Part shown: piece after piece, positions 6,183 to 63,361 of the stretch
How positions within the stretch are numbered: the stretch's first letter is position 1
Layout of the letters: each line of letters starts with the position of its first letter
Virus record (IMG/VR): IMGVR_UViG_3300020473_000011
Span: 186,001-250,000 of that record
Reading direction: 5' to 3' (one strand)
Length of the DNA stretch: 64,000 nt
The notes under the pieces: generated by a model
The model's input: only the letters and a program-made list of their open reading frames with translations
Told to the model about the DNA's origin: nothing
Database searches by the model: none
Position numbers and translations under genes: made by a program

Positions 6183-6375
6183 CGCTTAACCTAAAGTCTC
6201 AATTAGTATTGGATTAATTGTACAACACTTCACCGCAGCACAGCACGTACTAAAAGAGAGCGTTGTACTACGATTTTCTAAAAGCATTGCGCCGCAGAGT
6301 ATTTACTGAATCCAAGATGTTGTGGTATAAAGGGGCAGAATTGTACAAAATAGCCAAATTAGGACTGCGTAGCTA

Positions 6376-10660: not shown

Positions 10661-11398
10661 TTAGCCTCCTGTACTCTCTTCAATGGCCTTGGCAATGCTC
10701 TCTATGTAAGAGCCGATACCATGACCATCAACCAAGCTACTCATGTCCATACCAGACCCAGAAAGCATGCTTAGCGCGTCTTCTGCATTAATCGTAAGCG
10801 ACGGTGTGTTTATGCTTACACCTTCTGGGCTTACTGTAATTTCTAGTCCACCAAACTTTGCAAAAAGGCGCTGGTTCGGCCTATCAATTTCGATCACAGT
10901 GCCATAGGGATCCGTGATTAACTGTGTACCCGTCACTGTATTATGGTAGTTTAAGCTACCGTCTTGCAGTCGTTCCTCTTTGCTGGAATGCCCCTCGCGC
11001 TTATTAATAACAAGCTTGTTTCCTTGACGGTCTTGACGCCCATAACGGTCAGGGTACTCTGAGTTAAAGTCCTTGGGGCGGGTCTTTCTGTTGACAGCGC
11101 GCCAGCGGTAGATAGGGTGATAGATGTCCTCAGTTGGGAACTCTACAAGAATAGTAGACCCAACCTCTGGCACGACTATCGAACTACCGTCGTGAAGGTT
11201 GCCGTGCTCTGTCGGGTACTGAGGCGAGATCCATGGTAGATTATCTATGCCGATAAACTTTATGTCTAGCAGACCCTCAATTGAGCACTTAACACGACCC
11301 ATCATACGCGGGTCGTCATTCTTAACGACCTCGGCTTCATATTGTCTGCGAAGCTCATGTCGTGGTCTTAGCCAATCCGCTTGTTTTAATAAACCCAT
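10661..11398 (-). CDS. Baseplate central spike protein, gp5 N-terminal OB-fold type
   Basis: VVKNDDPRMMGRVKCSIEGL...LPW...VPEVGSTILVEF...PIY is the gp5/VgrG OB-fold pattern. Confidence 0.85.
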   Translation of the reverse strand: MGLLKQADWLRPRHELRRQYEAEVVKNDDPRMMGRVKCSIEGLLDIKFIGIDNLPWISPQYPTEHGNLHDGSSIVVPEVGSTILVEFPTEDIYHPIYRWRAVNRKTRPKDFNSEYPDRYGRQDRQGNKLVINKREGHSSKEERLQDGSLNYHNTVTGTQLITDPYGTVIEIDRPNQRLFAKFGGLEITVSPEGVSINTPSLTINAEDALSMLSGSGMDMSSLVDGHGIGSYIESIAKAIEESTGG

Positions 11399-12570: not shown

Positions 12571-12755
12571 ACTTCAAGTCTCATTTAGCTCATACCGCCA
12601 CAAAATGGCAGCCATTAGCCGTATTCTAACATTAAAGCATTGTACAAGGGAGTGGGGTGCTCGAAAAAAGAAACCCGAGACAGGGGTCAAGCTGTACTCG
12701 GGTTCGTTCTTTAAATTTGCTAGGTACAAATCAGCGGAGCACCTAACAAACTATG

Positions 12756-12847
12756 TGGTAGTGAGCTAGGGATTCGAACCCTAGGTACGCTATTAACGTA
12801 CGACGGTTTTCAAGACCGTTGCCTTAAACCAGCTCAGCCAGCTCACT
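12756..12847 (-). tRNA. tRNA-Ser(UGA)
   Basis: Cloverleaf AGTGAGC...ACGGT-CTTGAAA-ACCGT, long variable arm, GGTTCGAATCC, encoded CCA. Confidence 0.95.
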
Positions 12848-12879
12848 AAAAGTCTATAGAAATCAATTAAAAACTATGT

Positions 12880-12966: not shown

Positions 12967-13159
12967 ATCATAGTTCTAACAAGGTTACTAACGTCACCGT
13001 ATCTGGGTAAGTCTTCTGCCTTGTCTCAATCAGGACGCCTATAGTAGTTTAGCGGGGCTACGTTGTACAGCACTTTTTGAAAATATTTATAAAAAACTTT
13101 AAGCAGCCCGATGATTGTACAATAAATTTAATGAGTTCGCACATGTGCACTTTTTTTAG

Positions 13160-13188
13160 TTGACTTGTGCACGGGTGTGCACTAAGCT
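13160..13188 (+). promoter_or_regulatory. Sigma70-type promoter with operator-like GTGCAC repeats
   Basis: TTGACT, 17-bp spacer TGTGCACGGGTGTGCAC, TAAGCT; a third TGTGCAC at 13144-13150. Confidence 0.7.
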
Positions 13189-13218
13189 GACGCTAATTAC
13201 TATTACAAGGAAAAATTC

Positions 13219-13902
13219 ATGATCATCGACCCAAACAGTCAACTAGCTGCTGATATGCGTAAAGCCCTAAAAGGCCATGACCTTGAGTCTGTCATTAGTA
13301 CGCTAGAAGGTCTTACAGTCGACTCTACGACCGAGCTATCAGGTCGAGAACTGGCAGCCCTTCGCATGCACCTTCAAATATCAGTGCCACAGGCCATTGA
13401 GTACATTGACGAAGTTAAGTCTAAGCGTGCGTGGTATTACTATGAGGAAGGCCGTAACCCTGTCCCAAAAGAGATTGCGAGCAAGATGCTCTTCCTTCTT
13501 AACATGCGACAAGCAACCTTCACCTCTTTTGTTAAGGGTGATTACGAGGTTGGCCAGTTCTCAAACTTTGATCAGTTTAAGAATGAGATCGAGTCCGCAA
13601 CTGAAATTCGATGGGCGCTCCATCAATCGGCAGAGGCTGAGTTCGTTGCAAAATCACTTAATAACGAAGTTGTTGCGACTGTCTCTGCGCCATGCTGTGC
13701 GACAGCGCTTTACCATGACGGACGTAACAACTTCCAGACAAATTATACGGGTGGTTCAGTAGGCAAGCTTAAAGCACGCTTTGTTGAGGAAATGAAACAG
13801 CGTAAGGCCGTTTGGGGCACACTGCACCGCGAGTCAGACGGGGCATTGATTGACACATACAAGCGTGAGGATGATGCCTGCGAGGTTAGTGGCAATGAGT
13901 AG
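13219..13902 (+). CDS. Aca2/DUF1870-like HTH regulator with N- and C-terminal extensions
   Basis: ELAALRMHLQISVPQAIEYI...RAWYYYEEGRNPVPKEIA...MRQ and F..F......IRWALHQSAEAE resemble the Aca2/YdiL pattern. Confidence 0.7.
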   Translation: MIIDPNSQLAADMRKALKGHDLESVISTLEGLTVDSTTELSGRELAALRMHLQISVPQAIEYIDEVKSKRAWYYYEEGRNPVPKEIASKMLFLLNMRQATFTSFVKGDYEVGQFSNFDQFKNEIESATEIRWALHQSAEAEFVAKSLNNEVVATVSAPCCATALYHDGRNNFQTNYTGGSVGKLKARFVEEMKQRKAVWGTLHRESDGALIDTYKREDDACEVSGNE

Positions 13903-14194
13903 TAAGGGTTGGCTTTACGGTGAGCCTATGAATGGTCGAGCTTTCCAACACAGCGCTAATGGTTTCGACTTCTTTAGCGAGCGATGTGACTTTAAGGACG
14001 GGCTTTACGTCGTCAAACCCGATACCTACGAGACCAGTGAGTCTGACCTCATCGCAGCAACCGCGCACGTTGTTGGGTACCATGCCTGCAACGTGCGACC
14101 TGAGCTTAACGGCTTTGCAGGCTATGATGCGATTACCTTTAAGGTTGTCTCAGCCGCAGAAGCTGGGGCGTTGAAGGCGAGCTTTGGTTTGTGA
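13895..14194 (+). CDS. Small hypothetical protein coupled to the Aca2-like gene (99 aa)
   Basis: ATG at 13895 overlaps the upstream stop; GAGGT RBS; terminator follows. Confidence 0.75.
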   Translation: MSSKGWLYGEPMNGRAFQHSANGFDFFSERCDFKDGLYVVKPDTYETSESDLIAATAHVVGYHACNVRPELNGFAGYDAITFKVVSAAEAGALKASFGL

Positions 14195-14218
14195 ATGTAG
14201 CAGACTATCCCACTTAAC

Positions 14219-14252
14219 AAAAAGCCCTGTCATTTGACGGGGCTTTCTTTTT
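14219..14252. terminator. Bidirectional rho-independent terminator
   Basis: AAAAGCCCTGTCA-TTT-GACGGGGCTTTCTTTTT between convergent genes. Confidence 0.8.
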
Positions 14253-14617
14253 TAGCGGCTTAGGCGCTTAGCTAGTGCTTGGCCAATAGGGCTGTTCTTA
14301 TCGAGGTCAGCTGCTGTGCCTTCTAGCTGTGATAAACGCAGGCGACTAACAATGTAAGAGCCTACCGTGTGCGAGTCGCGTTCATACGCGAAACGTAGAA
14401 TATCTTTGTCATTGCAACGTAAGTCACTAAACAACGTGCGAACCTTATTCGACGACTCAAAGAGAGCAGCGCGGAAACGTTTCTTATCGTCGTTCGCAAC
14501 CGCTTGGCAAAGTCTTTGCCCTAATGCTTCGGTTGTTACGGCCTTGGCGGGGTTCACGATTGATGACATCGCAAAAAGAATAGTTATTGCAGCGATTGCA
14601 GCTATCAGGTACTTCAA
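14252..14617 (-). CDS. DUF3718-like secreted/periplasmic protein
   Basis: Signal peptide, then LCQAVANDDKKRFRAAL...LRCNDKDILRFA (two conserved Cys). Confidence 0.7.
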   Translation of the reverse strand: MKYLIAAIAAITILFAMSSIVNPAKAVTTEALGQRLCQAVANDDKKRFRAALFESSNKVRTLFSDLRCNDKDILRFAYERDSHTVGSYIVSRLRLSQLEGTAADLDKNSPIGQALAKRLSR

Positions 14618-18083: not shown

Positions 18084-21000
18084 CTAATCAAAAAGAATTG
18101 AGTTCATGATTGCAATACCCGTGTCGTCCACATTGAACGAACCAGCATGCCCCGAACTAGATGGACGTGGCGAACTTACTGTTGTGCGGCGCTGGGCTTT
18201 TGGCCTTGACGCCGACACCACATTCGGGTTATTACGATCAGGTCGCTTACCTTGTCCACCTGTAGCTGCACCCGATAGCTGTGCTTGTACAGTTGGCGAC
18301 ATAAGCGTGTCATTCATCAATTTCTCATCGCGCAGTGTTGGTGGCATTTCAACGTGGGCATTAAGCTGGCCACCTGCCGTAGCAACTGTGGCTGCTCCTG
18401 CAAGTGTCCCGCCCATTGCGGTATTACCTTGGCTAAGCAGTGAGCCTATCGCACCTGTACTAAACGCACGGCTTGAAACATTGCTCTTGGACGATGTTGA
18501 CCCACCGATGTTAGTAAGGTTGCTATAACTCGCAAGGTTAGACACCTTCGACACACTTGACCCATCATTACTCAAGCCAAACGTTTTATTTATCACATTC
18601 CGTGCGTTTTGAAGATGTGCATCTAGTTGACTATCACCTGTACTTCTATTCGACAAGTCAGGCGCTCGCCCAACGATAGTTGCTGCCGAAGACAAGCCGC
18701 CTTTTGCAGTGTAACCATCACCCATAAATAGCTGGTCGGCACTACCGCCTTCGGCTAACGATGGGTTAAAGAACGTGCCATCTTTTGATGCGATACTTGA
18801 TGAGCTTGGTTTGCTCTCTGAGCCGAACATGCTCGACCACGCATTATATGCCAGACCCATTGGCGTATAAGACGCTGCCGTACCAATCGCACCACCTACA
18901 CGGCTTAGCAGTGAAGGGGAGTCAGCTGTCTTACCATGTAGGTTAATAGACCCTGTGTTGCCATCGCTAACAAGACTGCTAACGCCTTTGTAAGCTAAGC
19001 CCATCGGCGTGTAAGACACCGCTGTGCTTGCCGCATCTTTTAAGCGGTCAAACATGGATGGTGACTCGCTGACTTTGCCTGACGGTGTTGCAGCTGCTCC
19101 CGTATTACCGTCGCTTACTAGGCTGCTAACGCCTTTGTAAGCTAAGCCCATCGGTGTGTAAGACACAGCGGTGCTTGCCGCGTCTTTTAAGCGGTCGAAC
19201 ATTGATGATGGTTCGCTTGCTTTGCCTGACGGTGTTGCAGCCGCTCCCGTGCTGCCGTCGCTTACAAGGCTACTAACGCCTTTGTAAGCTAAGCCCATCG
19301 GTGTGTACGACACAGCGGTGCTTGCCGCATCTTTTAAGCGGTCAAACATTGATGGCGTCTTTTCTTCCTTGGCACTTAAAGGCACTGACCCCGACGCATC
19401 GCTACTGAATAGACTAGAAGCGCCTGTCGCTGCCATACCAATAGGTGTATACGACATAGCAGTACTTGCTGCGTCAGACATTCTGCTAAGTAATGACGGC
19501 TTTTCATCGTCATCGCTAGCACTCCCTAAGCCCAATAGACTTGAGACTCCTGATGCGGCTAACCCCAAGGGTGTATACGACGCTGCGGTTGATGCGATAC
19601 TCGATGCTTTGCTTAATAATGAACTAGACTCATTGTTTGAGCTTTTGCCAACGCTCGTCGCCAAGCTTTTCGCAGCTTGGCTCGCAATCGCACTAGATGA
19701 ACCTGTTTGTTTATTAACACGGTCTCGTGGCTTAAATAGGTCAAGTTCCTTACTATCGTCTTTCGCAAGACTAAGACCTGTCATTGCCGCAGTACCCGCC
19801 AGTGCACCTGATGTTGCTAAGCTTGGCAAGGCATCGTCTACTAACTCGTCAGCATTTGGCGCTAGTGCATCACTGCTAGTGCCTGCAATCTTGGCAGCGG
19901 CACTCTTAGCCTCTTCCTCATCGTCGTCGCCACCCCATAGACCAAAGGTCATACGGTTCATGAGCGAATTACCGACATCACCAAGCATACTGCCCGCCGA
20001 GTGTATTCCGCGAGAGACTGAGCCTTCATCTAACAAACCAAAAGAAAGCCCAGATACGATGCCACCTAATGCCGACGACATTTTCTGACCTGTTGTGGCC
20101 TCTTGACCTTCTTCTAATCCGAAGTTGCTGCCCGCATTGTTCCATCCATTGAAACCATCGTAAGCCGCCATCAGTGGGGCTAGTAATGGAACCTTACCAA
20201 GCACGCCTTTCGCTAGACTACCAGCGCCTTTTAGTAAACCACTCGCGCCACCTGCGACACTAGCAATGCCACCACCTACACCACCTAATAAGCCGCCAGC
20301 ACCTCCCAGTAGCCCAGCGCCTTTAGACGCAATATTACCTAGGAAGCCTTTACCTTTCGAAAGGGCACCGCCTACGCCGCCAGCACCTCCCAGTAACCCA
20401 GCGCCTTTAGACGCGATATTACCTAGGAAACCTTTCCCTTTCGAAAAGGCACCGCTAACAGCACCGCCTATTCGAGATCCTAGGCCACCTTTACGTCGGC
20501 CAGACCCTCGGCTACGGTCTCTATCTGACCCACCAAAGTCAAGGAAGTCACCCGCCATGTCAAGCAGACCACCGCCTTCACCGCCTGTCGCTAGGTTAAC
20601 CATGCCTGTAGCTGCACCACTAATCGCAGCCTTCGCTGTCGAAGCCATATTACCAAGGGCACTGCGTACGCGACCCCCACGTGTACCTCCACGGCGTCCA
20701 CGGCGACCGCTTTCTATGTCTTGATTGCCTACACGGTCACGTCGTCTGTTCTTTCGACCACCTAGGAAGTCATCAAACAGGTCACCCGCACCAAGTAGGT
20801 CACCGATACCACCGCCGCCACCGAGCAAGCCTCCAAGAAGGCTTTCATCGGGGAGTGCGCCCTCTACACGCTTCAAAGTCTTACGCATATCTTTGATCAG
20901 AATCATTTCCTGATCGATGACATCCATTTCCTCTTTGTTGAGCTTCAAGGTTGAGCCAACTAGCGCCTCGCCATCTTTACCAGCTAAAGGGTTTGTAGCC

Positions 21001-22988
21001 ACCTGCATCATAGGTGATAGCGTTTCAGCTTTCTTTGAGACGGCTGAGTTTCCATCACGCTTTGCTTGGCGCTGCTGTTTCTTACTTTGCTGTGGCGTAG
21101 GGTGTGCCATCAAGTCGTTTTTACGGTCTGTCTTACCGACTGCAATTGATGCCGTCGTTGAGCTTAGCTGACCTTTTACCTTACGCTGACTACCGATGCT
21201 CGTTCTACGCGTTTCTGCGGGGGCAGGTAATGCTAGTACGGGCGAAGTATTTCTACGAGACGTACGTGGCTGATCAGGCAGCGCCAGAGTACTTCCTGTA
21301 TTGTTGTAGTTAGCAATACTTTTAGAACCCGACACCGAACGACGGTTATCAGTGTTCGTGATATTCGTTACGTTGCTGTTGTTCGTTACGCTTTTCGCAG
21401 CGTTTGCAGCATCCTGTGCCGACTTTGCAGAATTGACTGCTATGGTCTCTAGAGCGTCTAGCGTCTTTTCTTGCGTACGGTCTTTCGGCGCAAACAAGTC
21501 TAATTCTGTTGTTTTCGATTGCCCTGCATTCAAGCCATCAATATGCGCTGTGGAAGTTACCTTACTTCCTGCACTTGGCAATCGTGGGACTTCGGTCTCG
21601 ACATCAGCGCTGTTTTGCTTGAAAGCGCCTAGAAGTCGGTCTTTTAATGGTGCGCGCTTTGGAGCAGGTAAGGCCAGTACTTCCTGTTTCTCTTCTTTCT
21701 GCTCAGCATGGCGCTGCTTTTTATCTTCAAGGTACTTGTCGACCTCTTCGGCTGCACCTTCAAAGCCAATTGACCCTAGTGCGGCAGAAACCACCTCACT
21801 GCGGATATGAGAAAATGCGCGTGAACCAAAATCGCGAAGCATCCCCTTTTCTTTTTCGTTAGGCTCATCCTCGAAGTCGGCATCAGGGCGCTGATCCCCC
21901 TTGCCATCTTTAGACGACGCCTTATTCGACGTGCCTAGCCGTGCGGCTTCTTCCTGCTTTTCTGCACGGCGCTCACCGCGCTCTTCTATAAAACTTGAGA
22001 CCTCTGCGGCAGCACCTTCAAATCCGACGGTACCTAGGACAGCACCTAGCGCTTCTTCACGAAGACCAGCAATGTCGCCTGTCATGATCTTAGTTAGGAA
22101 GCTTGTACCACCTTTTTCTGGGTCGTCTTTACCGAACTGCCCCTTAGAGTTCCGTTTTTGTTTAGAATTTGCCTTCTTCTCTTCGTTTTCCTTAGCTTTC
22201 TTTTCGCGGTCTTCTTTTGACTTTTCTTTTTCAGCCTCACGCAGATCAAAGTCACGCTGCTTGTTCTGCTCATCGTGTACTAAACGGTTATGTGTTAGCT
22301 GGTCTTGATTGACTGATAGAACCTCGTGAACACCTCGGCTTAGCGTACCATTCTCTGAGGCTGAACTGCGTAAAAGCTCTACGATGTTACCTAGCTGTTT
22401 TGTCTGGTGAACATTGATACGGGCTTCTTGCTCGGCGAGCTTACGAATAACCGCCATATCATCAGCATCGGCGGCCGTATGGTCACCCAGTGATGCAAGT
22501 TGCTTTAACAGGACTGCTTGTTGCTTTGTGCTGGTGGCATTTTCAATAGCTTGAAGATAACCGTCAGTTAAGTCACCAACCGTGATCGGTTTAGCTGCCT
22601 GTATGTCGGACAGCTGGCCAGCTAGTGTATTTAAGGCATTAGCGCTATCAGCCATTTCCTCTTTTGTTAGTGAGAGGCCATCGGCTAGCTTAGTAAGAGC
22701 AGGTGTTTGATTAAAAGCATTATCAGCAACGTCACCAACATCGTTACGTGCAAACGACATTGCGCGCAACTGTGCAACTAACTCGGCTAAGTCATCTGCA
22801 ATGCTATCACTTGCCATATTAGTCGTATTATTGGTAGCCGCTGTAGGTTGAGCCAAAGCAGCCAGCTGAGCTTCTAGGGTAGACGCCAGCGTGTCTGAAC
22901 TTGGAAGAGTTGATGACGGCTCTAGGTGGTCTCTGACCTTACCGTAGTCAGATAAGCGGTCAGCTGTTTTAGTAAAGCCAAGTGGCAT
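18084..22988 (-). CDS. Tape measure protein
   Basis: 1634 aa, Ala/Gly/Ser-rich with coiled-coil stretches; follows tube and chaperone genes; KVPLLAPLMAAYD...GGIVSGLSFGLLD segment. Confidence 0.8.
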   Translation of the reverse strand: MPLGFTKTADRLSDYGKVRDHLEPSSTLPSSDTLASTLEAQLAALAQPTAATNNTTNMASDSIADDLAELVAQLRAMSFARNDVGDVADNAFNQTPALTKLADGLSLTKEEMADSANALNTLAGQLSDIQAAKPITVGDLTDGYLQAIENATSTKQQAVLLKQLASLGDHTAADADDMAVIRKLAEQEARINVHQTKQLGNIVELLRSSASENGTLSRGVHEVLSVNQDQLTHNRLVHDEQNKQRDFDLREAEKEKSKEDREKKAKENEEKKANSKQKRNSKGQFGKDDPEKGGTSFLTKIMTGDIAGLREEALGAVLGTVGFEGAAAEVSSFIEERGERRAEKQEEAARLGTSNKASSKDGKGDQRPDADFEDEPNEKEKGMLRDFGSRAFSHIRSEVVSAALGSIGFEGAAEEVDKYLEDKKQRHAEQKEEKQEVLALPAPKRAPLKDRLLGAFKQNSADVETEVPRLPSAGSKVTSTAHIDGLNAGQSKTTELDLFAPKDRTQEKTLDALETIAVNSAKSAQDAANAAKSVTNNSNVTNITNTDNRRSVSGSKSIANYNNTGSTLALPDQPRTSRRNTSPVLALPAPAETRRTSIGSQRKVKGQLSSTTASIAVGKTDRKNDLMAHPTPQQSKKQQRQAKRDGNSAVSKKAETLSPMMQVATNPLAGKDGEALVGSTLKLNKEEMDVIDQEMILIKDMRKTLKRVEGALPDESLLGGLLGGGGGIGDLLGAGDLFDDFLGGRKNRRRDRVGNQDIESGRRGRRGGTRGGRVRSALGNMASTAKAAISGAATGMVNLATGGEGGGLLDMAGDFLDFGGSDRDRSRGSGRRKGGLGSRIGGAVSGAFSKGKGFLGNIASKGAGLLGGAGGVGGALSKGKGFLGNIASKGAGLLGGAGGLLGGVGGGIASVAGGASGLLKGAGSLAKGVLGKVPLLAPLMAAYDGFNGWNNAGSNFGLEEGQEATTGQKMSSALGGIVSGLSFGLLDEGSVSRGIHSAGSMLGDVGNSLMNRMTFGLWGGDDDEEEAKSAAAKIAGTSSDALAPNADELVDDALPSLATSGALAGTAAMTGLSLAKDDSKELDLFKPRDRVNKQTGSSSAIASQAAKSLATSVGKSSNNESSSLLSKASSIASTAASYTPLGLAASGVSSLLGLGSASDDDEKPSLLSRMSDAASTAMSYTPIGMAATGASSLFSSDASGSVPLSAKEEKTPSMFDRLKDAASTAVSYTPMGLAYKGVSSLVSDGSTGAAATPSGKASEPSSMFDRLKDAASTAVSYTPMGLAYKGVSSLVSDGNTGAAATPSGKVSESPSMFDRLKDAASTAVSYTPMGLAYKGVSSLVSDGNTGSINLHGKTADSPSLLSRVGGAIGTAASYTPMGLAYNAWSSMFGSESKPSSSSIASKDGTFFNPSLAEGGSADQLFMGDGYTAKGGLSSAATIVGRAPDLSNRSTGDSQLDAHLQNARNVINKTFGLSNDGSSVSKVSNLASYSNLTNIGGSTSSKSNVSSRAFSTGAIGSLLSQGNTAMGGTLAGAATVATAGGQLNAHVEMPPTLRDEKLMNDTLMSPTVQAQLSGAATGGQGKRPDRNNPNVVSASRPKAQRRTTVSSPRPSSSGHAGSFNVDDTGIAIMNSILFD
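18952..19352 (-). repeat. 147-bp (49-aa) tandem repeat inside the tape measure gene
   Basis: SMFDRLKDAASTAVSYTPMGLAYKGVSSLVSDG three times; three more degenerate SYTPxG units flank it. Confidence 0.9.
20292..20445 (-). repeat. 84-bp-period duplication inside the tape measure gene
   Basis: SKGKGFLGNIASKGAGLLGGAGG twice. Confidence 0.85.
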
Positions 22989-25542: not shown

Positions 25543-27420
25543 TTACGCGCCACCCAGTAGTTGTTCAGCTAGGCCGAAATCAAGACCCGTCGGCAAGATC
25601 GCTGTCGTGAACGGGATGTACTCAACCGAACGCGTCGGCTTAACGAATAACCACAAGTTCATACGACCTGCGTCGATGTCTGTCGCAGAGTTGTTCGTCT
25701 CGTCACAAACAACCTTAAAGTCAGAAACACCACGGCGCGCCTTGATGTTGTTCATGTACGACGTAACCATCATTGACGCGATAGAACGCGTTGACTCGTC
25801 GTTCAAGTCGAATAGGAAGCCTTCTAGGGCATCACGGATTGCAGGCTCGATAGTGATCAACATCATACGAACGTTGATGCGGTCTAACGCGCTTGGCACC
25901 GATGCAAGAGTCTTCTGACCCCAGATAAGAACACCCTTACCAGCCGCGAAACGAATAGGGTTGATACCCGCATCGTACAGTAAGTCCATTTCACCCTTAT
26001 CGAAGCGACGACGTGCATCAAGTACCTTGATAACACCACGGTTTAGACCAGCGGCTGGGTACCATACTTCTGAGTTCATCGCAGTCTTGCTCAGTGCTAA
26101 AGCGGCGTACGCTTCTGGTGAGACAAACACACTACGATTGTTGAACTTGTCGTAGATCTTACAGTGAGGGCTATAGATAGCGCCGTACGAGCTGTTCGCG
26201 TTAAGAACAAGGTTGCGGTAGTCCTTGATCTCGTTAAGGTACGAGCTTGAAGACTCGGCGCTGTAAGGCGTCGATAGCATCGCAAAACAGTCCTTACGTT
26301 TCTCAGCTAACGCTAAAAGCGCTTTCTGGTACGACGGTAGCGTGTAGCCGCCATCCATCAGGATTGTGATCGGGAAGCTGTCTTCGTTTTCCAGCTCTTT
26401 CAGTGCAGCTTGCATGTGGCCTGCCATTACGGCACCACCTAAGTCACCGCCTGCTAGGAACTGGCCTTCGAATACGTCGGCTGGCGCACCCGAATAGAAC
26501 GGGTTAACGAACGCACGAATGTATTCCGATTGTTCAAGCTGGTTCTCGATAAAGATGTTACGGTTGAAGCCGTCAACAGCACCTTCATCTAATGAACACG
26601 TGAAAGTCTCGCGAGGGTCGCGCTCGTTGTCCAAGTACACTTGAACTTCAAACGTGTTCGGCGTCTTCGCAACCTGACGGTATAGACCCATCATGATCTT
26701 GCCGTCGCCTTGGTCAGTCAGCGCCAAGAACTCACCGTCTTTCATTTTGTCTTCCGACTCAGATAGCCACAGCTTGCCGTCGACGTCACGAGTAACCCAA
26801 TAGGCTGTATCGGCTTTAATACCCGTAGGTAGTGCGCCAATGGTGCCATCTTCTTTGATCACACTGAAACGTACGACACTGCCTGTGCTGAACTCTTGAG
26901 TCGCACTTAGGCTGCCATCTGGGATCATTACGCCACTGCCGTCGTCGACTTCGTTAAAGCTCACAGCTTCAACTTGACGATAGTTATGAACTTGGATGTT
27001 CACGCGATTAGCCCAATCACCTTGGTCTACGGCTGTAACGATGAACGCTTCATCGTCGTCTGCTTCAACTGACGCTAGGTCATCGAAACCGTCGGCAATC
27101 GCAGCTGTTGCTGCTTCTTTACCAAGCTGACCGATAGCTGCTGCGGCGAACTTTGCGTCGTCTGCTAGGACACGCTTAACCCATAGCTTATCGGCACCGC
27201 CAAGGTACGTAAGCGCTGAGAAGTATGCGTTATCAAAACCAATTTTGATTTTGTTGTCGATTGTGTAACGAGATAAGAACATGTTCTCGTTGGTGTTAAG
27301 CTGCGCTTCCACTGAACCGCGCTCTGCACGAGGGATTAATACGCATGCGTAAATACCTTCACTACCGCCCACGCGCTGTGAAAGATTCACTTCTTTCAAG
27401 ATAACTTGTGCTGATGACAT
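25543..27420 (-). CDS. Tail sheath protein
   Basis: 625 aa; WYPAAGLNRG, LYDAGINPIR, LIWGQKTL, ALDRINVRMMLI are gp18-type sheath motifs. Confidence 0.97.
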   Translation of the reverse strand: MSSAQVILKEVNLSQRVGGSEGIYACVLIPRAERGSVEAQLNTNENMFLSRYTIDNKIKIGFDNAYFSALTYLGGADKLWVKRVLADDAKFAAAAIGQLGKEAATAAIADGFDDLASVEADDDEAFIVTAVDQGDWANRVNIQVHNYRQVEAVSFNEVDDGSGVMIPDGSLSATQEFSTGSVVRFSVIKEDGTIGALPTGIKADTAYWVTRDVDGKLWLSESEDKMKDGEFLALTDQGDGKIMMGLYRQVAKTPNTFEVQVYLDNERDPRETFTCSLDEGAVDGFNRNIFIENQLEQSEYIRAFVNPFYSGAPADVFEGQFLAGGDLGGAVMAGHMQAALKELENEDSFPITILMDGGYTLPSYQKALLALAEKRKDCFAMLSTPYSAESSSSYLNEIKDYRNLVLNANSSYGAIYSPHCKIYDKFNNRSVFVSPEAYAALALSKTAMNSEVWYPAAGLNRGVIKVLDARRRFDKGEMDLLYDAGINPIRFAAGKGVLIWGQKTLASVPSALDRINVRMMLITIEPAIRDALEGFLFDLNDESTRSIASMMVTSYMNNIKARRGVSDFKVVCDETNNSATDIDAGRMNLWLFVKPTRSVEYIPFTTAILPTGLDFGLAEQLLGGA

Positions 27421-30196: not shown

Positions 30197-30342
30197 AACA
30201 TCACCTCGTATCTGTCCTGTTTGGCCAGCGTCAGGCCAGCAAGTCTCAATTAGATAGTATTGTACAAAGTATTGGCTGTATTGTCATCGAACCTTGATGG
30301 CGTTAGACTTCATTGGTGATTAATTGAGACAGGTGAACTCGT

Positions 30343-35369: not shown

Positions 35370-35418
35370 CTGTTGTACAATGATTTTCGATTAATTGAGA
35401 CACTTTTGAGGAAAACTA

Positions 35419-44608: not shown

Positions 44609-47600
44609 TTAGGCTAGGTTACCCCATATAACGTACCCGTATTCGGTATCTCCCAGCGTATAACGGCGATATAGCCAGCTACCGTCATCAGGGTCTCTGT
44701 ACAGGATAGGCTCAACCACACCGTTTCGTATTGCCTCGATCATAGCTGCACGTGGTGAGTAAGTTCCTCGTGCTGTTCCGTTTTGCACTTTCTCGATCAA
44801 CTCTTCACGGTACTTAGTACGCAAGTCACGTAACCACTGCATCAGGTCAATCTGAACGATACCTGCCTTATAGCGTCGGAAGTCCTCACTTCGGAACTTA
44901 ATAGGCAAGTTAACATCAACCCTGTCATGGAACGGCAATGGCTTCATAAGTGAGTAGTCGATGCTATCAAGCACAGTGGCCATATCAACAGCATACTCTA
45001 CAAACAGGTCATCAGACTTAGCCACGGCCGCTTGCTTATAGCGGTCAATAATATCGAACGTTGGAAGAATATTACCGACTAGCTTCGCGTAGTCAGCCGT
45101 GTCCATCGGCTTCATCATACGGTAGTGCATGTTCGCAACAGGGTCACTGAGCAGGTACTGCTCGTAAGCTTGGCCAACGGCATTCACCATATCTTGGTAA
45201 CTCGCGTACTTAGAGTGCAGCACGCCACCTGCTTCGGCACCTGTTGCCTGTGCGTACGCTTCATCAATACGCGCGTCACTCAAGCCCATTGCCTTCAATG
45301 AACTGTAGAGCGAAGCAAGACCTTGCTCGTACTGCTCGTACAGACGGTCTAAGCGTTTTGCACTCACAGACTCTTGGTCATACTCGTCGTACAACGCAGT
45401 GTCACCTAGGTTAGACTGATCGAACTTATTGTAGCTCTCCGTGTCGCCTAGCCCTGCTTGTGCTACATCGGCGAATAGCTCGCCTTGCCCTAGCTGATAC
45501 TGTTTCAGGCGCATGTAGTGTGCCTTTGACACCTCTTTTGCTTGTGCAAAGAACATATCAGCTTGTGTAACGCTTAACCCAGCTTGCAGTAGTGCATTGT
45601 AGATTTCAGGCGCAACCAAGTCAGACTGTACTAGCTTGTTGTAAATAGCGCTGTCGCTTTCCAGTGATTGCTTGTAGCTCTGGTATGAGTCTGTTGTCTC
45701 TGCCAGCGCTTGACGCATAGCATGGTAGAACTCCGTCATACTCTCAGGCTTTTGTGCATACCACTGATTACCAAACCAGTTCTCGCGCATGACCTTAACG
45801 ACCTCGTCGTGCTCTTTCTCAGACAAGGCGACCTTTTGTTGTTTGAAGTCCCAGTGGTCGATAGCCACTTCGGTCAAGTTTGCGACCCACTTCTGGTATA
45901 GCTGACTTTCGCTCGGCGCAGCAAGTCTCTCAAAATCAAGACTATCAGCCAGCTTTGTGATCGTCTTGCGTAGCACAATCTCAATCTTCTTCGCGATACT
46001 CGACACATTCTGTGGATTAATACGCTTCATATCTGTAATGCGTATATCCGACGATGATACCTTGTCCCGCAACCCGATTGGTCGGTCGTTCAACAGACTG
46101 TAGCCACGGCCATCACGTCGCATCGCTATCCAAAAGTCGGTCGACACTATATCGCGTATTGGTACATACGCCTTGTTGGCTGCATGACCCAGTGGCACAC
46201 CCACTGGGAGTGATAAGCTATAGGCCGTTGACGTTGGACGTACATGCGGTGTAAAGCGCTTTTTAATGTCCGTCTTTGTCGCCATTTCTGACGTCAGTGT
46301 TTGATAGAACTTAGTGTGTGTTGCGTAACGGCTTTCACTTAGCTGGTGGTAGCCCGTACCACTAAATACTTCGCTGTAGTTGTCCAGCTGTTCAAAATGG
46401 ATCGCGTTAGAGAATACGTCGAACGGTGACCACTTCGTGTAGGTCACATCAGCATTAACATACTCTGACTCTATGCGGATAAAATCTTTATTCACGTAGT
46501 CATGCGCTTGTGCATTACGCAAGCGTATTACATCGGTAATTTTCACGTCTGGACGCGTCCGTACATCTTGGTCATACCGACGGTTCACGTCGACAGCTGA
46601 GACCTCAAGCTGCACCGAGTGGATAATACGACTTAACGTATGTTGGTCGTAGCGCTGTGTCCATTTTGGTAAACGGTAGTTCTCCACAAATGTTCGGGTA
46701 GGGATGACCCAGCGGTCAGTCTCAACCGTAACAGGTATACGTTGACCCATCGCACTTTGTTTGTACAGTACGGATGAACCCACGCCTTTTATTTGGTCGA
46801 GCATCTTAACCCACGCACTACCTACAATGCTGATTGATGGCGCTGTCGGCATCATAACTTGATGGTAGCGTGCGCCCTGCATCATTGGTGCCGCATGCTG
46901 CTGAGGTTTGACCCATTGCTCACCCGTCATACGCACAGCTGTGCTGGTGGTCGGATTAACCTGCTTAGTCAGAATATCTTGTGACAAACTCAATGAGTCC
47001 GTTTTCTTCTTGATAAGCTCAAGCTCTTGGGTTCCCATTATCTGGTCTGTACTTGCACGGTACGGCGACTGTATATGACTGCGCCCTAAGCTCTGCGAGA
47101 TATGACCGTAGTCTTGCAACCAGTTCGGCAGCCCATAAGGGAACGTATGGCGGAATTTAGGGAACCAGTACTCAGCCTTTTGAGACAGCGTACTTCTAAA
47201 GCCCGTCAGTGAATCGAACTTAACTTCTTGTAGGTTAAGACTCGCCTTAGCAACTTTCATTTCAATACTTTTCAGACGCATAGAGTCTGCTTGCGACCAC
47301 GGGGTCAGCTCTATTCGCTGAGTTACATAGCGCGTCAGTGCCTTTCGGCCATTGATGAGCTGTAGTGACCCCGATACATGGAAATCACTCTTAGTCATCG
47401 TCAGTGCAAACGGCTGGAACTTCGACATGTATGTCGTGCTCATGAATTTACCGTCACGTGGCTTATAACCCTTCACGGTCTTAACGCGCATGTGTCGCCC
47501 AAGTGCATCAGTCACACTCGGGATCTTCATGTGCTTGTAATGCTCCGTCGTTGCTTTCTCCATCTGAGCACCTGCCATCGCTAAGTGGAAGTCCGTTGCT

Positions 47601-50600
47601 TTTGCAAGGTCAACCGCTGCAAACTTTGGATTAAACCCACGCAGTACTTCAAGTGCTACATCAGTCAGGACAGGATTCTCGGCATAGCCTTCCTTCACGG
47701 CCATCGTTTCGTGCAAGTTGATCAGGGGCTGCATTACTTTTGAGTGTGCGTCGGCTAAGCGTATCGTCGTTCCAAACACTTCACTTGTCGTGTCAATTTT
47801 TGGCACGTTGTCCATCGTGATCTTAATCAATTCGACGGCAGTCTCCATCGTGTTGATTTGCAGCTTAGTGCCCGTAACATCAGCTAAATACTTAGCCCAG
47901 CGCATAACAACCGACTCGACATGCTTCATTGCAAGGCTGTGCGGTTCCATCACAAGCATAGCAACGTCGTTCATGATGGCATTGTATGAGGTTTCCGATT
48001 GCATTAGCACATCATTCATCGCCTTGATTTGACTACCTGCAATATTAAAGTTAGCCACTTCTGGTAACTGCTCTACAAAGTTGTCCATCAGCCTCATGTG
48101 AGTTGTTTGAAGTCCTGCTATCTCCATTGAAGACTCTTTACTCAGCGTCACCTTATTTTGCAGCGCACGTTGTGCAAGTCTATTTAGTAATACAGCCTGT
48201 TCAAGTATAGTAAGAGCATCTTGGTTTTGGTAGTTAACGCCAATTTCTTTCGTGAGCTGACGGTCGCGAACAAGCAGCAAGCGCTCGCCTAAGTGTGCTG
48301 CATAGCTCGTTAGGCTCGCCAGCGACACATTGTTTAGCTCTGTACGAATGTGACCACCACGCGTTAGTTTTGCACTGCCCTGTAGCTCAGTTGTTTTGAC
48401 TGTGCTTAACGGCAAACCATCCTCATAATGCGTCTGGCCACCTGCAACGCGTGTGTACAACAAGCCATCGGCCGTCGTGTCTTGTGACATTACGACGGTA
48501 GACGCGACGCCGTGCTCAATCGCTTGTCGTAGCGTCTGGTACTCGACAGTTGTCTCGACTAAATTTGACGCATAGTCAGTGCCTGCCACGACTGAGGCAT
48601 CGCTACTTAGGCGCGACGTACGCTGAACGGCCGAAGTTTCAATACGGTCTACCCAATAGCGCACCGATGGCTCTGACGTTAGTGTGACCGCCTTAACGTG
48701 TTTACGGTTAAGGTCATGACCTTGACGGTGATAGATGTCCTGCTGTGTGCTACTAAGTTTAGACGTAACCAGCTGTGTACCAACTTGCACATTAGTCCAT
48801 GATGCTTTCGTAAATGGCAGCTCTTCGCGGTGTGCTGATATTGAATCGGCCGTAACCAGCTTAATTAGCTCATCAATCGTAATACCGACTTTATCTAGCT
48901 TGAAGTTAACTAAGTCAGAGAGCACGCGGCTATTCTTGTCGACCTTAGTGAAGACACCTTTTGGTATGGCTTTCAGTTGGCTAAACGCCCAATCGACTAG
49001 ATTAGACTTTACAGCTTTAAGCCAGTCATTCGTATTGTAGGCGACTGCCTCAGCCTCAATATTGCTAACAGCATCGCGGCCAATCAGCACCGCATTTATC
49101 TGTGTTGAGGTATTTGATTTAGTCTCAAAATCAACACCATTCAATACACGCGTAATCCCTGAGTCTATGGCTAGTTGGGCACTGTCCATTAAAGTTGTGG
49201 ATGCGTGCAGGGCAGTGTCTAGTGTCTGTGTGTTCTTTGGCGAAATTGCTTGCGAGCGTATCAGTTTCACAAGGTCTTGGTAGTACGTTGACCCCGAAAT
49301 CACGTCCATACCCACAGGTTGTGGGAACATCGGCACGCCAGCTCTTTGAACATCAAAGTTACTTGCTGTTAGTGAATAGTTCTCGACCTCTATGATACGC
49401 AGGTCTACCTTGTTCTCTACGCGGGTGAATGGCTGTAGCGTGAACGCCTGACCCTTAACAAGTTCAGCACCTGTCTTAGCGCCACGCGCCACAAGCGTTG
49501 ACGACTTACTCGTGCCTAGGAAGCCCTGCACGCGCAGTGGTACCGTGCTAAAGCGGTTAATGGAAGTCTGCGCCATGTAGTATTCTAGAACGCTCTCAGC
49601 CTCACTACGGGCTTCGGTAAGGCGCAGAGGAACCACATTAAGTGACACCTTCGTTTCACCCATAGCAAAAGGTACTGCGTCCATAAAGCCACTACGGCTC
49701 TTTTCAACAGTGAACGTTAAGCGGTCAGTCCTTGTGCTCATACCACTGACTTTATGCAGTTGCAGCGTATTCTCTTTGGTTGACGCTTTGTGCTTCCCGA
49801 ATGGGATCAGGCGTGCTTCACTTGAGAACAGATAGCCCATCTTATTTAGGTCTATCGTTGTGGCGAACTTCTTAATCGTGTGGTTAACGTAACCTAGCCC
49901 TTTTGCTTGCGCTAAGGTTGAGCGGTGTACACGGCTGGGTATTTTTAACCCATCGCTATAATTCCACGCCGATCCTGATTGCATTTCAAAGGGTACAACC
50001 TGTGCTTGTGCTACACGATTGCCCGTGCCCACATCAAACGCTGCGCGCTGCCACTTGTAGGCTGCATCACGGAAAAGTCGCAGGGCGACTGTCGAGATAA
50101 AACCGCTTTGACTGTTCAGTGTAAAGGTGACATCGTCGTCAGCGACTGACGACCGAGCTAACGCATTGTATAACAGCTCAATTGTGCTTGAGAATGCGTT
50201 ACTCTCGCGTGCATCATAGCTTACCGTTTCAGGTAGACTGCTTGTAAGGTACGCTGCCGTTAAAAACTTGACTAGTTCCGCCGCAGGGACATCCTGATCG
50301 TCTCTAACGAGATTGATTATGTCTGTCCCAGCGGTGCTCAAGCGTGACATTAAGTAGCTCACGTCCTCGGCACTATCAGACGACAACAATGCCCGTGTGA
50401 AGCGTACTTTATCGACCCCCGAGTCAATTGACCAATTGCTCAGTACTTCGTAAAAAAGCTCAGCTACGTCACTTGTTCCTTTTGCTTGAGAAAAGACCAG
50501 CTTTTGTGCAGCTGGCATATTGCCGCCATTATCCAGACGGGTATTAATCCCCACCACATCATTTGAGGTGCCCACAGGCTTAGGCACTAGCGGATCAGTC

Positions 50601-55388: not shown

Positions 55389-57305
55389 TTAAATTTGGTT
55401 ATCTTTAATGGTACCTAGACGACCACCGTACCAACGCATTAGCATACGCATGCCTGTGTTGTACTTACCCGTCGAAGGTAGACCTTTATAAAGACGCGTC
55501 GTGCTTTCCCACTCACCGCCGTTTGCTTCACACGAAGCTTGGTCGGCATGGCCTGTCACTGAACACACGCCTTCGTCGTACATAGCAAACTCAGAAAGTG
55601 CACCATTACTGATAACGTCCGCTGAGGTGTAGCCAATTAAGTCGGCTTCTTCTAGGTACAGGTAGCGCTGCGTTGTTAAGCCTGACGGTACCGTGATTAC
55701 GTACTCGTAATCTTCTGATACAGCAACTTGCTCAAACGTATTCAGCACCGCATTTGAATCTGGCGCGTCTTCACCTGCGTTCAGCTCTTCACTTGGACGG
55801 TGGATGTCCGATTCACGTACCACGAAGTACATCGACTTCTGGAATTTCTCGTGATAAACACCATACATACAGAAAAGTGGGCAGAATGACTTATTCTGGT
55901 CAACGAGTGGTGCACCTGTGTCCTTATCAACTAGACGTTGGATATTCAGCCAGCTAAAGCGGTGACCTTCATTCGTTTCGTATTGGTCAACAGCCTGATC
56001 CCATACTGCTAGAACAATACCGTGGTCAGACACAGTTAATGCGTAAGACATCGGAACGTTTAGCGCGCCTTCCCGTGGATCACGTGCTTCACCATCGGTA
56101 TCAAATGAGTTTTGCGCCATAGGGATCAACTCATAACGGCTGTTGTCATAAACTTCAACACCGATGTTAGCTGTATCATCAATCGTCGTTAGATCCGTGA
56201 TGGCGTGCTCTGTTAGCGTCCATACAGCATCACGCGCAGAGTCGTTAGCGAATTTAACGCGCCAATCGAAGCTAAAGGCTGTGCCCGCATTCTTAACATC
56301 AATGCGCCAACCTTTTAGCTCTGAGTAGCTACCCTTCACAGTGAAGGCCACCTGCTGTGCTAGACCGTTTTCGTCACGTTCAGTACCTACTATAGCATCG
56401 GCGTCGATTGACGGTGGTAGGTCGCCCACTACTTTATAAGTAATGTAGCGCTGACCATCTAGGTCTGCTAGGGTCTGGCTACCGTACTCTTTAAAGTAAA
56501 GCGTACACTTTCTTGGCTCGTATACAGGTTTCTTTAAGAGGTGGCCATAATCCGCGTCAGAAGGTGGCGTACGTTGTGAGTAACGACCTGATTCAGGGAA
56601 AGTCGCATTTAAGTCAACTTCCGATGCGTTCGTCATTTCGAACCATTCGATGTCAAGCTCGTACGTCACGCGACCCGATGTATCAAGACCCGCGACAGGT
56701 TCGATACGACGGCTGCCCCATACTTCTTGTGGTAGGCCACCACCTGATAACGGCTTTAAGTACCATTTAAGATTACCGTATGGGTCAGTTGATTGAACTT
56801 GAGTAACACGCGTATGATAAACCGCACGGTTAATAAAGCCATTTTCTTTATAGGCTTCATCAGTCATACGTAGACCGACAAAACCTAGCGTGCCCATCGT
56901 TGAGACTTGGTCAGCAAGATATTCTGTGTTCGGTGGAATATACGGAATTGCTGGTGCTTTTTTCTTGCCCCAGTCAATTTGCAGTGGTGTGGTTACGTTA
57001 ATGTGACCCATACCATGGCCAATGCTATGTTGTGTATCAAAGCGGATAACCCAAGGTTGCTTCGCTTCAACACCATCCACACAAGCGTCGATATGCGGTG
57101 TAGCCTGAATAATGATCACGTCATTCGCAGGGCTGTTTGGATTTGTAAAGTCTAAGTCACTAATATCGGTAGGATAAGTGATCTCAAATGCGTTGTTATC
57201 TGCGCCATCGTAGAACTCTGTCAGGTCTTTTACAACAGACGTGAATAGCTCTCTTGGCGTCGCAAAACCGCCACGTGTGACGGAATACGGCTCAAATGCT
57301 GCCAT
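55389..57305 (-). CDS. Paralogue family B member (638 aa, with large insertion)
   Basis: SWLNIQRLVD / FVVRESDI / GLTTQRY / GYTSADVI. Confidence 0.75.
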   Translation of the reverse strand: MAAFEPYSVTRGGFATPRELFTSVVKDLTEFYDGADNNAFEITYPTDISDLDFTNPNSPANDVIIIQATPHIDACVDGVEAKQPWVIRFDTQHSIGHGMGHINVTTPLQIDWGKKKAPAIPYIPPNTEYLADQVSTMGTLGFVGLRMTDEAYKENGFINRAVYHTRVTQVQSTDPYGNLKWYLKPLSGGGLPQEVWGSRRIEPVAGLDTSGRVTYELDIEWFEMTNASEVDLNATFPESGRYSQRTPPSDADYGHLLKKPVYEPRKCTLYFKEYGSQTLADLDGQRYITYKVVGDLPPSIDADAIVGTERDENGLAQQVAFTVKGSYSELKGWRIDVKNAGTAFSFDWRVKFANDSARDAVWTLTEHAITDLTTIDDTANIGVEVYDNSRYELIPMAQNSFDTDGEARDPREGALNVPMSYALTVSDHGIVLAVWDQAVDQYETNEGHRFSWLNIQRLVDKDTGAPLVDQNKSFCPLFCMYGVYHEKFQKSMYFVVRESDIHRPSEELNAGEDAPDSNAVLNTFEQVAVSEDYEYVITVPSGLTTQRYLYLEEADLIGYTSADVISNGALSEFAMYDEGVCSVTGHADQASCEANGGEWESTTRLYKGLPSTGKYNTGMRMLMRWYGGRLGTIKDNQI

Positions 57306-63253: not shown

Positions 63254-63361
63254 TTAATTGCCTCCCAGTCAGGCGGTCTCAACTCAGTATCAATGCTACA
63301 ATTATAAACCATTGTACAAGAGTTTCATACTACCCGAAAGTGAGGCTAATTGGCACCTAAT

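What the first reader, a model, noticed from the sequence alone, without database searches (positions are those of the whole stretch)
13144..14252. Aca2-like autoregulated operon inserted in the tRNA array: candidate anti-CRISPR/anti-defence locus
Seen: a self-contained plus-strand unit. It has a sigma70 promoter (TTGACT-17-TAAGCT) whose spacer is TGTGCACGGGTGTGCAC, a third TGTGCAC at 13144, a 227-aa protein with an Aca2/DUF1870-like core, a translationally coupled 99-aa gene and a terminator. Established: Aca2 is an HTH repressor of anti-CRISPR operons that binds inverted repeats in the acr promoter and can also bind the mRNA; acr genes are small and adjacent to aca genes. Inference: an early-expressed anti-defence operon with GTGCAC as operator.
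Basis: partly seen in the sequence, partly recalled or inferred. Interest (0 to 1): 0.85.

Follow-up and report, generated by a model that had tools for sequence, protein, structure and literature searches.

The report
Self-repressed Aca2-like operon in jumbo phage
A giant marine phage carries a small two-gene unit whose first protein, an enlarged relative of the anti-CRISPR regulator Aca2, very probably switches off its own promoter, while the second is a small phage-only protein of unknown function, so it is a reasonable but unproven lead for a new anti-defence or host-takeover gene.

Summary
At 13160-14253 (+) there is TTGACT-17-TAAGCT, a 227-aa gene, a 99-aa gene whose ATG overlaps the first gene's stop by 8 nt, and a hairpin/T-run terminator. 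The 227-aa protein passes Pfam's Aca2_YdiL threshold (46.7 bits against a cutoff of 23.8) and matches solved Aca2 structures (E about 1e-8). New here: five divergent orthologous loci (51-65% protein identity) keep the same promoter. GTGCAC-N4-GTGCAC fills the 17-nt spacer exactly, and four of them keep a second copy about three helical turns upstream. The exact 16-mer occurs once in 64 kb. Autorepression is therefore well supported in silico.

The anti-CRISPR reading is not supported. The gene order is the reverse of the canonical one (regulator first). The regulator is twice the usual size, with an extra conserved C-terminal domain. The operator differs from TTCG-N6-CGAA, and there is no conserved 5'UTR motif. 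The 99-aa protein matches no Pfam, PHROG, PADLOC, PDB or BFVD entry. It belongs to a broad phage-only family (250 representative clusters) that usually stands alone behind unregulated sigma70-like promoters. This argues against a toxin and for an early accessory gene.

Verdict: a new variant of a known regulator kind, with uncharacterised cargo.

The parts
13135..13150 (.). Distal operator copy (GTTCGC-ACAT-GTGCAC). It is degenerate in this phage.
   Evidence: It is the only 2-mismatch match to GTGCAC-N4-GTGCAC next to the exact copy. Orthologs L013, L015, L018 and L019 carry a better copy 7-9 nt upstream of their -35.
13160..13165 (+). -35 hexamer TTGACT
   Evidence: Read directly from the sequence. 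TTGAnn is invariant at this position in six loci.
13167..13182 (.). Proximal operator GTGCAC-GGGT-GTGCAC. It is a perfect inverted repeat and fills the promoter spacer.
   Evidence: It is the only exact match in 64 kb. The half-site positions are conserved in all six loci while the N4 varies.
13183..13188 (+). -10 hexamer TAAGCT (consensus TAnnCT)
   Evidence: It lies 17 nt after the -35 in all six loci, and T1, A2, C5 and T6 are invariant. The consensus scanner did not call it, because it matches TATAAT at only 3 of 6 positions.
13207..13211 (+). Ribosome-binding site AAGGA of ORF1
   Evidence: Read directly from the sequence; it lies 7 nt before the ATG.
13219..13902 (+). ORF1, 227 aa: a long-form Aca2/YdiL-family HTH repressor. 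It has a variable N-terminal extension (1-40), the Aca2 core (42-150) and a conserved extra C-terminal beta-beta-alpha-beta-beta domain (about 158-215).
   Evidence: Pfam PF08965 at 46.7 bits. PDB Aca2 at E 1e-8. Foldseek's top hits are Aca2, YdiL and SO3848. In the AlphaFold2 model the C-terminal domain has pLDDT 81-88. Ortholog alignment.
13895..14194 (+). ORF2, 99 aa: a small alpha/beta protein of an uncharacterised phage-only family (motifs RCDF, GYHA and ELNGFxGYD). It is the regulated cargo.
   Evidence: Alignments. The profile search gave 250 representatives at E<=1e-3. The model has pLDDT 80.9 and pTM 0.75. There is no fold or family match.
14221..14253 (.). Intrinsic terminator (11-pair stem and T-run). 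It is probably bidirectional and shared with the convergent DUF3718 gene.
   Evidence: Terminator scan. The A-run before the stem and the T-run after it are visible.
14252..14617 (-). Convergent neighbour: a 121-aa DUF3718 protein with a hydrophobic N-terminus. It is not part of the operon but belongs to the same accessory island, and its presence varies among relatives.
   Evidence: Pfam PF12514, E 8.8e-14. It is present in L013 and absent from the short gap in L018 and L020.

Best explanation
This is a conserved two-gene accessory operon of an uncultured marine jumbo myovirus. The same locus lies on contigs of up to 419.5 kb.

Proposed mechanism:
1. Host RNA polymerase transcribes the operon from a sigma70-type promoter (TTGACT-17-TAAGCT), probably early in infection.
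2. The first product is a long-form Aca2/YdiL-family helix-turn-helix protein. It dimerises and binds the inverted repeat GTGCAC-N4-GTGCAC that fills the promoter spacer. A weaker copy about 32 bp (three helical turns) upstream may help.
3. Binding occludes RNA polymerase and shuts the operon off once enough protein has been made.
4. This limits the dose of the tightly coupled second product. It also limits plus-strand transcription running against the surrounding minus-strand tRNA and structural genes.
5. The second product is the cargo. It is a small phage-only protein that related phages express from unregulated early promoters. Its most likely role is an early host-directed function (host takeover or counter-defence), with the target unknown.

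Shown here: family membership, the promoter and operator architecture and its conservation, the operon structure, and the distribution of both genes.
Inferred: DNA binding, repression, timing of expression, and any function of ORF2.
For: - Family: PF08965 above threshold, solved Aca2 chains at E 1e-8, and Foldseek top hits Aca2, YdiL and SO3848.
- The key DNA-contact Arg is conserved.
- Operator: the exact 16-mer occurs once in 64 kb. Three of the six TGTGCAC copies fall within 39 nt.
- Six loci whose ORF1 proteins are 51-65% identical to the window's keep -35, one base, GTGCAC-N4-nTGCAC and TAnnCT in register, while the N4, the 5'UTR and the flanks diverge.
- The operator position and its 10-bp centre-to-centre spacing equal those of ZF40 Aca2 IR1 (PMC6765145).
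- ORF2 starts between -8 and +20 nt from the ORF1 stop in all six loci. A terminator follows.
- The surrounding genes are minus-strand baseplate, sheath and tRNA genes preceded by a different, phage-specific motif.
- ORF2 homologs in other large marine phages stand alone behind TTGACA-17-TTAAGT, or lie in arrays of small genes in Vibrio phages.
- Neither gene was found in 185,579 species genomes.
Against: - The -10 is a poor consensus match and the scanner did not call it.
- No binding or expression data exist, because the phage is known only from metagenomes.
- The distal operator is degenerate in this phage and absent in L020.
- Only 64 kb of a genome of at least 419 kb was searched for further operators, so ORF1 might also regulate other loci.
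- The dimerisation part of the model (residues 126-154) has low confidence.
- ORF2's role is a guess from context alone.
Confidence: 0.62

Rival explanations
1. It is a genuine acr-aca locus. ORF2 is a new anti-CRISPR, or an inhibitor of another defence system, and ORF1 is its Aca.
For: - ORF1 is an Aca2-family regulator with a promoter-embedded operator.
- ORF2 is small, phage-only, lacks any known domain, and lies in early-gene contexts.
- Aca2-regulated operons are reported to hold many unannotated candidate anti-defence genes (PMC13551039).
Against: - ORF2 resembles no solved Acr or any other structure.
- The order is regulator first, whereas most acr genes lie upstream of aca (PMC8633003).
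- ORF1 always pairs with the same partner, rather than one aca pairing with varied acr genes.
- Most ORF2 relatives have no Aca2 neighbour.
- Aca2-fold regulators also occur in contexts unrelated to acr, such as YdiL and SO3848 (PMC8434428).
Confidence: 0.15
2. ORF1 is bifunctional. Its conserved extra C-terminal domain is itself an effector, as in regulator-inhibitor fusions such as AcrIF24 or AcrIE10, or it is a sensor. ORF2 would then be a second cargo.
For: - The C-terminal domain (about 158-215) is as conserved as the HTH, with 28 invariant positions in six sequences, and it folds confidently (pLDDT 81-88).
- Fused Acr-Aca proteins are documented (titles and abstracts of PMC9638941 and PMC13530269).
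- There is a weak fold resemblance to the T4 antitoxin Dmd (TM 0.75 over 59 columns, E 0.29).
Against: - No stand-alone homolog of the domain was found.
- The Dmd lead fails a profile-profile test (probability 0.5%), and the aligned sequence segment does not fit the predicted secondary structure.
- The domain could equally be an oligomerisation module that bridges the two operators.
Confidence: 0.1
3. It is a type II toxin-antitoxin-like module, with an HTH antitoxin first, a small toxin second, and autoregulation at the promoter.
For: - The gene order, tight coupling and operator-in-promoter layout resemble antitoxin-toxin operons.
- The HTH also resembles the DNA-binding domain of the antitoxin MqsA.
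Against: - ORF2 homologs stand alone, with no HTH partner, in many phages and on more than 140 contigs.
- There is no match in PADLOC or Pfam toxin families.
- Neither gene was found in bacterial genomes.
Confidence: 0.04
4. ORF1 is a general phage transcription regulator with targets elsewhere in the genome of more than 400 kb, and ORF2 is a co-factor that modulates it (co-repressor or anti-repressor).
For: - Only 64 kb of the genome could be scanned.
- An extra domain on ORF1 could dock a partner.
- The ORF1-ORF2 pairing is strictly conserved within the lineage.
Against: - No further good operator exists in the 64-kb window, and near-matches are fewer than in shuffles (23 against 36.9).
- ORF2's family functions without ORF1 in most phages.
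Confidence: 0.09

Closest known systems
Aca2 of Pectobacterium phage ZF40 (acrIF8-aca2 operon; PDB 7b5j, 7vjo, 7vjq)
   Same: - Same Pfam family, with about 29% identity over the core.
- Same HTH with the essential Arg.
- The inverted-repeat operator lies between -35 and -10 with half-sites 10 bp apart, and there is a second, weaker site. Autorepression is the likely function (PMC6765145).
   Different: - 227 aa against 116 aa, with a variable N-terminal extension and a conserved extra C-terminal domain.
- Operator GTGCAC-N4-GTGCAC instead of TTCG-N6-CGAA.
- The second site lies upstream of the promoter rather than in the 5'UTR, and there is no conserved RNA motif.
- The regulator gene is first in the operon.
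- The partner is not a known Acr.
- The host element is a jumbo myovirus known only from metagenomes, not a temperate phage.
SO3848 of Shewanella oneidensis (PDB 2ox6) and YdiL of Salmonella (PDB 1s4k)
   Same: - Both have the Aca2 fold and are found outside known acr loci.
- SO3848 is also a longer form, with a C-terminal helical extension (PMC8434428).
- Both were recovered by Foldseek.
   Different: - They are chromosomal bacterial genes of unknown function.
- Their extensions are helical, not the beta-beta-alpha-beta-beta domain predicted here.
Aca1-type control of strong early acr promoters (general Aca logic)
   Same: A self-made repressor damps a strong early promoter. This limits both the product and the run-on transcription into neighbouring genes. 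Here the operon runs against the local minus-strand genes.
   Different: That logic has been demonstrated only for acr operons. Here it is an inference from layout.

Membership tests
Aca2/YdiL structural family (Pfam PF08965) | Sequence match above the curated Pfam threshold over the whole domain | tested here: met
   46.7 bits against a cutoff of 23.8; residues 42-150 cover profile positions 3-117 of 118. All five database orthologs also carry PF08965.
Aca2/YdiL structural family (Pfam PF08965) | Fold: an N-terminal HTH plus the family's own dimerisation domain | tested here: inconclusive
   Foldseek's best hits are Aca2 (E 1.6e-4), YdiL and SO3848. However, the residues that correspond to the dimerisation domain (126-154) have pLDDT below 50.
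Aca2/YdiL structural family (Pfam PF08965) | Recognition-helix Arg (R30 in ZF40 Aca2) required for repression | tested here: met
   It aligns to R70, which is invariant in seven sequences. The requirement is shown in PMC6765145.
Functional anti-CRISPR-associated Aca2 | Shares an operon with a known or verified acr gene | tested here: not met
   ORF2 matches nothing in Pfam, PHROGs, NCBIfam, PADLOC, the PDB (by sequence or fold) or BFVD. No dedicated Acr database was available.
Functional anti-CRISPR-associated Aca2 | acr upstream and aca downstream in the operon | tested here: not met
   The regulator is the first gene in all six loci.
Functional anti-CRISPR-associated Aca2 | Inverted-repeat operator overlapping the promoter | tested here: met
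   GTGCAC-N4-GTGCAC fills the -35/-10 spacer and is conserved.
Functional anti-CRISPR-associated Aca2 | Family operator TTCG-N6-CGAA, and a structured RNA motif (IR2) in the 5'UTR | tested here: not met
   The half-site sequence differs. The 5'UTR is about 23 nt and is not conserved apart from the RBS. There is no Rfam match and no significant fold. Reference features from PMC6765145 and PMC13551039.
Functional anti-CRISPR-associated Aca2 | Represses its own operon by binding DNA | not testable with these tools
   This needs an EMSA or a reporter assay.
Type II toxin-antitoxin module | The toxin gene is always accompanied by its antitoxin | tested here: not met
   ORF2 homologs occur without any HTH neighbour.
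C-protein-controlled restriction-modification operon | The controller gene is followed by a restriction endonuclease, with a methyltransferase nearby | tested here: not met
   ORF2 is 99 aa with no nuclease match. The neighbours are tRNA genes, a DUF3718 gene and structural genes.
Dmd antitoxin of T4-like phages (for the ORF1 C-terminal domain) | Detectable homology to the Dmd family | tested here: not met
   Dmd is the top but non-significant hit of a profile search against the PDB (E 0.64). Profile-profile comparison gives probability 0.5% and E 0.13. Only a generic small-domain fold resemblance remains.

The most novel reading that the evidence does not exclude
The ORF2 family has at least 250 clusters at 50% identity, is confined to phages, and is common in large marine phages. 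It could be a new, widespread early effector against a host defence or a core host process. The lineage studied here would then have placed it under a dedicated long-form Aca2 repressor because its dose matters. ORF1's unique C-terminal domain could add a second activity or a sensing input, which would make this the first Aca2-type circuit described in a jumbo phage.
Probability: 0.25. Interest if true: 0.7.

Novelty: new variant of a known kind. Interest (0 to 1): 0.5.

Why it matters
Aca-type regulators are used as beacons for finding anti-defence genes. This locus shows a version those searches would probably miss or mis-score. The regulator is double-length and comes first in the operon, its operator sequence is different, and the element is a giant lytic-type marine phage.

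The locus gives a concrete, testable operator-repressor pair, and the orthologs provide natural sequence variants of it. It also singles out a broad, wholly uncharacterised family of small phage proteins for functional tests. If ORF2 proves to be inert, or simply a host-takeover factor, the locus still documents that Aca2-fold autorepressors are used outside anti-CRISPR operons.

Tried and rejected
- **Dmd-like C-terminal domain.** Foldseek and a profile search of the PDB both pointed to T4 Dmd. I built a Dmd family alignment from T4-like phages. hhalign gave probability 0.5%, and the aligned stretch disagrees with the predicted secondary structure. Rejected as homology.
- **TTGTACAA as a variant -35 element.** No enrichment of -10-like hexamers was found 16-18 nt downstream. 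Rejected. The motif instead pairs with ATTGAGAC.
- **Aca2-style RNA control.** There is no Rfam hit, the upstream RNA fold has z = -0.77, and the 5'UTR is short and not conserved.
- **Recent insertion.** No GC or skew anomaly was seen, and the position is conserved in relatives.
- **Searches for more relatives of ORF1.** The IMG/VR, JGI metagenome and species-genome scans returned only the same phage or nothing.
- **ORF2 in bacterial genomes.** None was found.
- **A near-identical or closely related deposited phage.** None was found.
- One alignment was too diverse to scan with.

Full report
**What is there**

The window is part of the structural module of a very large tailed phage.
- PHROG matches identify a baseplate hub at 10661-11398 and three tail-sheath paralogs.
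- The same locus, with identical ORF2, lies on metagenomic contigs of 147-419.5 kb from marine samples, including TARA.
- No deposited phage is close at the DNA level.

Within a minus-strand run of structural genes and eight tRNA genes sits a plus-strand unit:
- -35 TTGACT at 13160-13165
- a 17-nt spacer
- -10 TAAGCT at 13183-13188
- RBS AAGGA
- ORF1 at 13219-13902 (227 aa)
- ORF2 at 13895-14194 (99 aa), with its ATG 8 nt inside ORF1
- an 11-pair hairpin with a T-run at 14221-14253

A DUF3718 gene converges on the same hairpin.

**Is it more than chance?**

- TGTGCAC occurs six times in 64 kb, where shuffles give 14.5, and three of the six lie within 39 nt.
- Read as GTGCAC-N4-GTGCAC, the spacer element is a perfect inverted repeat and is unique in the window. 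The only 2-mismatch copy close to it lies 32 bp upstream.
- The consensus scanner did not call the promoter, because the -10 matches TATAAT at only 3 of 6 positions. The sequence alone therefore left the promoter in doubt.

**Comparative evidence**

- The large protein database holds five ORF1 relatives at 51-65% identity, all carrying PF08965.
- Their contigs give five independent upstream regions.
- In all of them TTGAnn, one base, GTGCAC, four variable bases, nTGCAC and TAnnCT lie in exactly the same register. The N4, the 5'UTR and the flanks differ.
- Four of the five also keep a second GTGCAC-N4-GTGCAy copy 7-9 nt upstream of the -35. In the window this distal copy has a degenerate left half.
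- This is a phylogenetic footprint of a promoter with an operator in its spacer.
- In all six loci ORF2 begins between -8 and +20 nt from the ORF1 stop. The bicistron is therefore conserved even though the overlap itself is not.
- The unit also keeps its place between tRNA-Leu(tag) and tRNA-Ser/Glu in relatives, and it shows no compositional anomaly.

**ORF1**

- Residues 42-150 match Pfam Aca2_YdiL over the whole model, at 46.7 bits against a cutoff of 23.8.
- They also match solved Aca2 chains at E about 1e-8 and YdiL at 3e-4.
- The AlphaFold2 model is of moderate quality overall (pLDDT 63.8). The HTH is acceptable, and a C-terminal beta-beta-alpha-beta-beta domain is confident.
- Foldseek's best hits for the model are Aca2, YdiL and SO3848.
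- The Arg needed for repression by ZF40 Aca2 (R30; PMC6765145) aligns with R70, which is invariant.
- ZF40 Aca2 binds TTCG-N6-CGAA between -35 and -10 and uses a weaker second repeat in the 5'UTR. The operator here has the same location and the same 10-bp half-site spacing, but a different sequence, and its second copy lies upstream of the promoter.
- The protein is twice the canonical length. The N-terminal 27-40 residues vary and are absent in L020. Residues 158-215 are as conserved as the HTH.
- That C-terminal domain has no stand-alone relatives.
- A tempting link to the T4 antitoxin Dmd did not survive a profile-profile test.

**ORF2**

- There is no match in Pfam, PHROGs, NCBIfam, PADLOC or PDB sequences.
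- A confident model (pLDDT 80.9, pTM 0.75) has no significant neighbour in the PDB or BFVD.
- A profile search of 1.84 billion representatives found 250 relatives at E<=1e-3, mostly 75-100 aa. They share the motifs RCDF, GYHA and ELNGFxGYD. None has a Pfam or PHROG annotation.
- One relative is fused to an RNA polymerase alpha C-terminal domain.
- Relatives lie in arrays of small genes in Vibrio phages of about 130 kb, in another tRNA region without ORF1, and as a lone gene on more than 140 marine contigs of up to 365-385 kb. In the locus examined (L025) that lone gene sits behind TTGACA-17-TTAAGT with no GTGCAC site.
- Neither ORF1 nor ORF2 was found in one genome each of 185,579 bacterial and archaeal species.

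**Interpretation**

The best-supported reading is a self-repressed early accessory operon.
1. Host RNA polymerase fires the promoter.
2. ORF1 accumulates, binds the spacer operator, and closes the promoter.
3. The dose of ORF2, and the antisense transcription into the tRNA and structural genes, are thereby capped.

The family assignment, the architecture and its conservation are shown. Binding, repression and timing are inferred.

The surrounding genes carry a different and highly over-represented motif. TTGTACAA occurs 29 times against 1.7 expected and is often followed by ATTGAGAC. This fits a separate, phage-specific transcription programme and sets the sigma70-like operon apart.

'Aca2-like autoregulated operon with a GTGCAC operator' is supported. 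'Candidate anti-CRISPR/anti-defence locus' is a legitimate hypothesis without evidence, for these reasons:
- The gene order is reversed relative to most acr-aca operons (PMC8633003).
- The regulator, not the partner, is the lineage-restricted element.
- Aca2-fold regulators are known from contexts unrelated to acr (PMC8434428).
- No RNA motif is present.

The stand-alone ORF2 copies argue against a toxin-antitoxin reading. The small size of ORF2 and the absence of a methyltransferase argue against a controller-protein restriction system.

**Novelty and score**

This is a new variant of a known kind. It is a long-form Aca2-family autorepressor with a new operator and a new extra domain, in a jumbo phage, controlling a member of a broad uncharacterised family. 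I found no paper linking Aca2 to jumbo phages beyond a review that mentions both. Interest is moderate at 0.5. The regulatory part is solid but expected of the family. The cargo is the open and potentially valuable part.

Noticed in passing
window, 29 sites (for example 2325/2368, 16822/16854, 24281/24326, 57378/57400, 60280/60314, 13115); composite sites 1982-2011, 2301-2332, 6196-6225, 30243-30267, 35373-35401, 63276-63319: The palindrome TTGTACAA occurs 29 times against 1.7 expected. Most copies I checked lie in gaps between ORFs, and they are often paired 22-45 bp apart. Six copies are followed 9-29 nt later by TTGAGAC (0 expected). ATTGAGAC occurs nine times against about 2 expected, and where checked it lies 12-46 nt before a start codon. 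One copy, on the minus strand at 13023-13030, faces tRNA-Leu. This is probably the phage's own promoter or regulator site. It is not a sigma70 -35 variant. It is conserved upstream of ORF1 in the ortholog loci.
   Followed up: partly
window 14252-14617 (-): A 121-aa DUF3718 protein (E 8.8e-14) with a hydrophobic, signal-like N-terminus is encoded inside the phage's tRNA region. It is present in L013 but apparently absent in L018 and L020. It may be a host-derived secreted or periplasmic accessory gene, and it could hint at the host group.
   Followed up: no
L013:290-325 and L020:265: In ortholog L013 the codon that corresponds to the ORF1 ATG reads ATA, while the conserved N-terminal peptide is still encoded in frame. 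In L020 the protein really lacks the first 27 or so residues. The N-terminal extension of ORF1 is therefore dispensable, or it starts at an unusual codon in some relatives.
   Followed up: partly
protein P0019 (148 aa, ENA contig of 1205 bp): An ORF2-family domain is fused to a bacterial RNA polymerase alpha-subunit C-terminal domain (PF03118, E 2.9e-12). Other relatives carry unannotated extensions, one with Cys pairs (P0043). This hints that the family may act on transcription or DNA, but it rests on a single short contig.
   Followed up: partly
L010:4700-4900: Upstream of the ORF2 homolog in another large phage contig there are two sequences with tRNA-like T-arm and acceptor 3' ends. ARAGORN does not call them. 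They may be tRNA remnants or atypical tRNAs. This ORF2 homolog also sits in a tRNA region.
   Followed up: no
window 25543-27420, 55389-57305, 57494-58840 (all -): There are three tail-sheath-like paralogs in one 64-kb stretch (PHROG E-values 3.9e-73, 9e-58 and 2.6e-59). Two giant ORFs of 1634 aa (18084-22988) and 3108 aa (44609-53935) were not analysed.
   Followed up: no
window 12737-12857 (-) and 14180-14253 (+): Sub-threshold Rfam matches were seen: sX4 sRNA over tRNA-Ser at 37 bits (gathering score 70), and rnk leader over the terminator at 29 bits (gathering score 55). Both are most likely side effects of the tRNA and hairpin structure.
   Followed up: no
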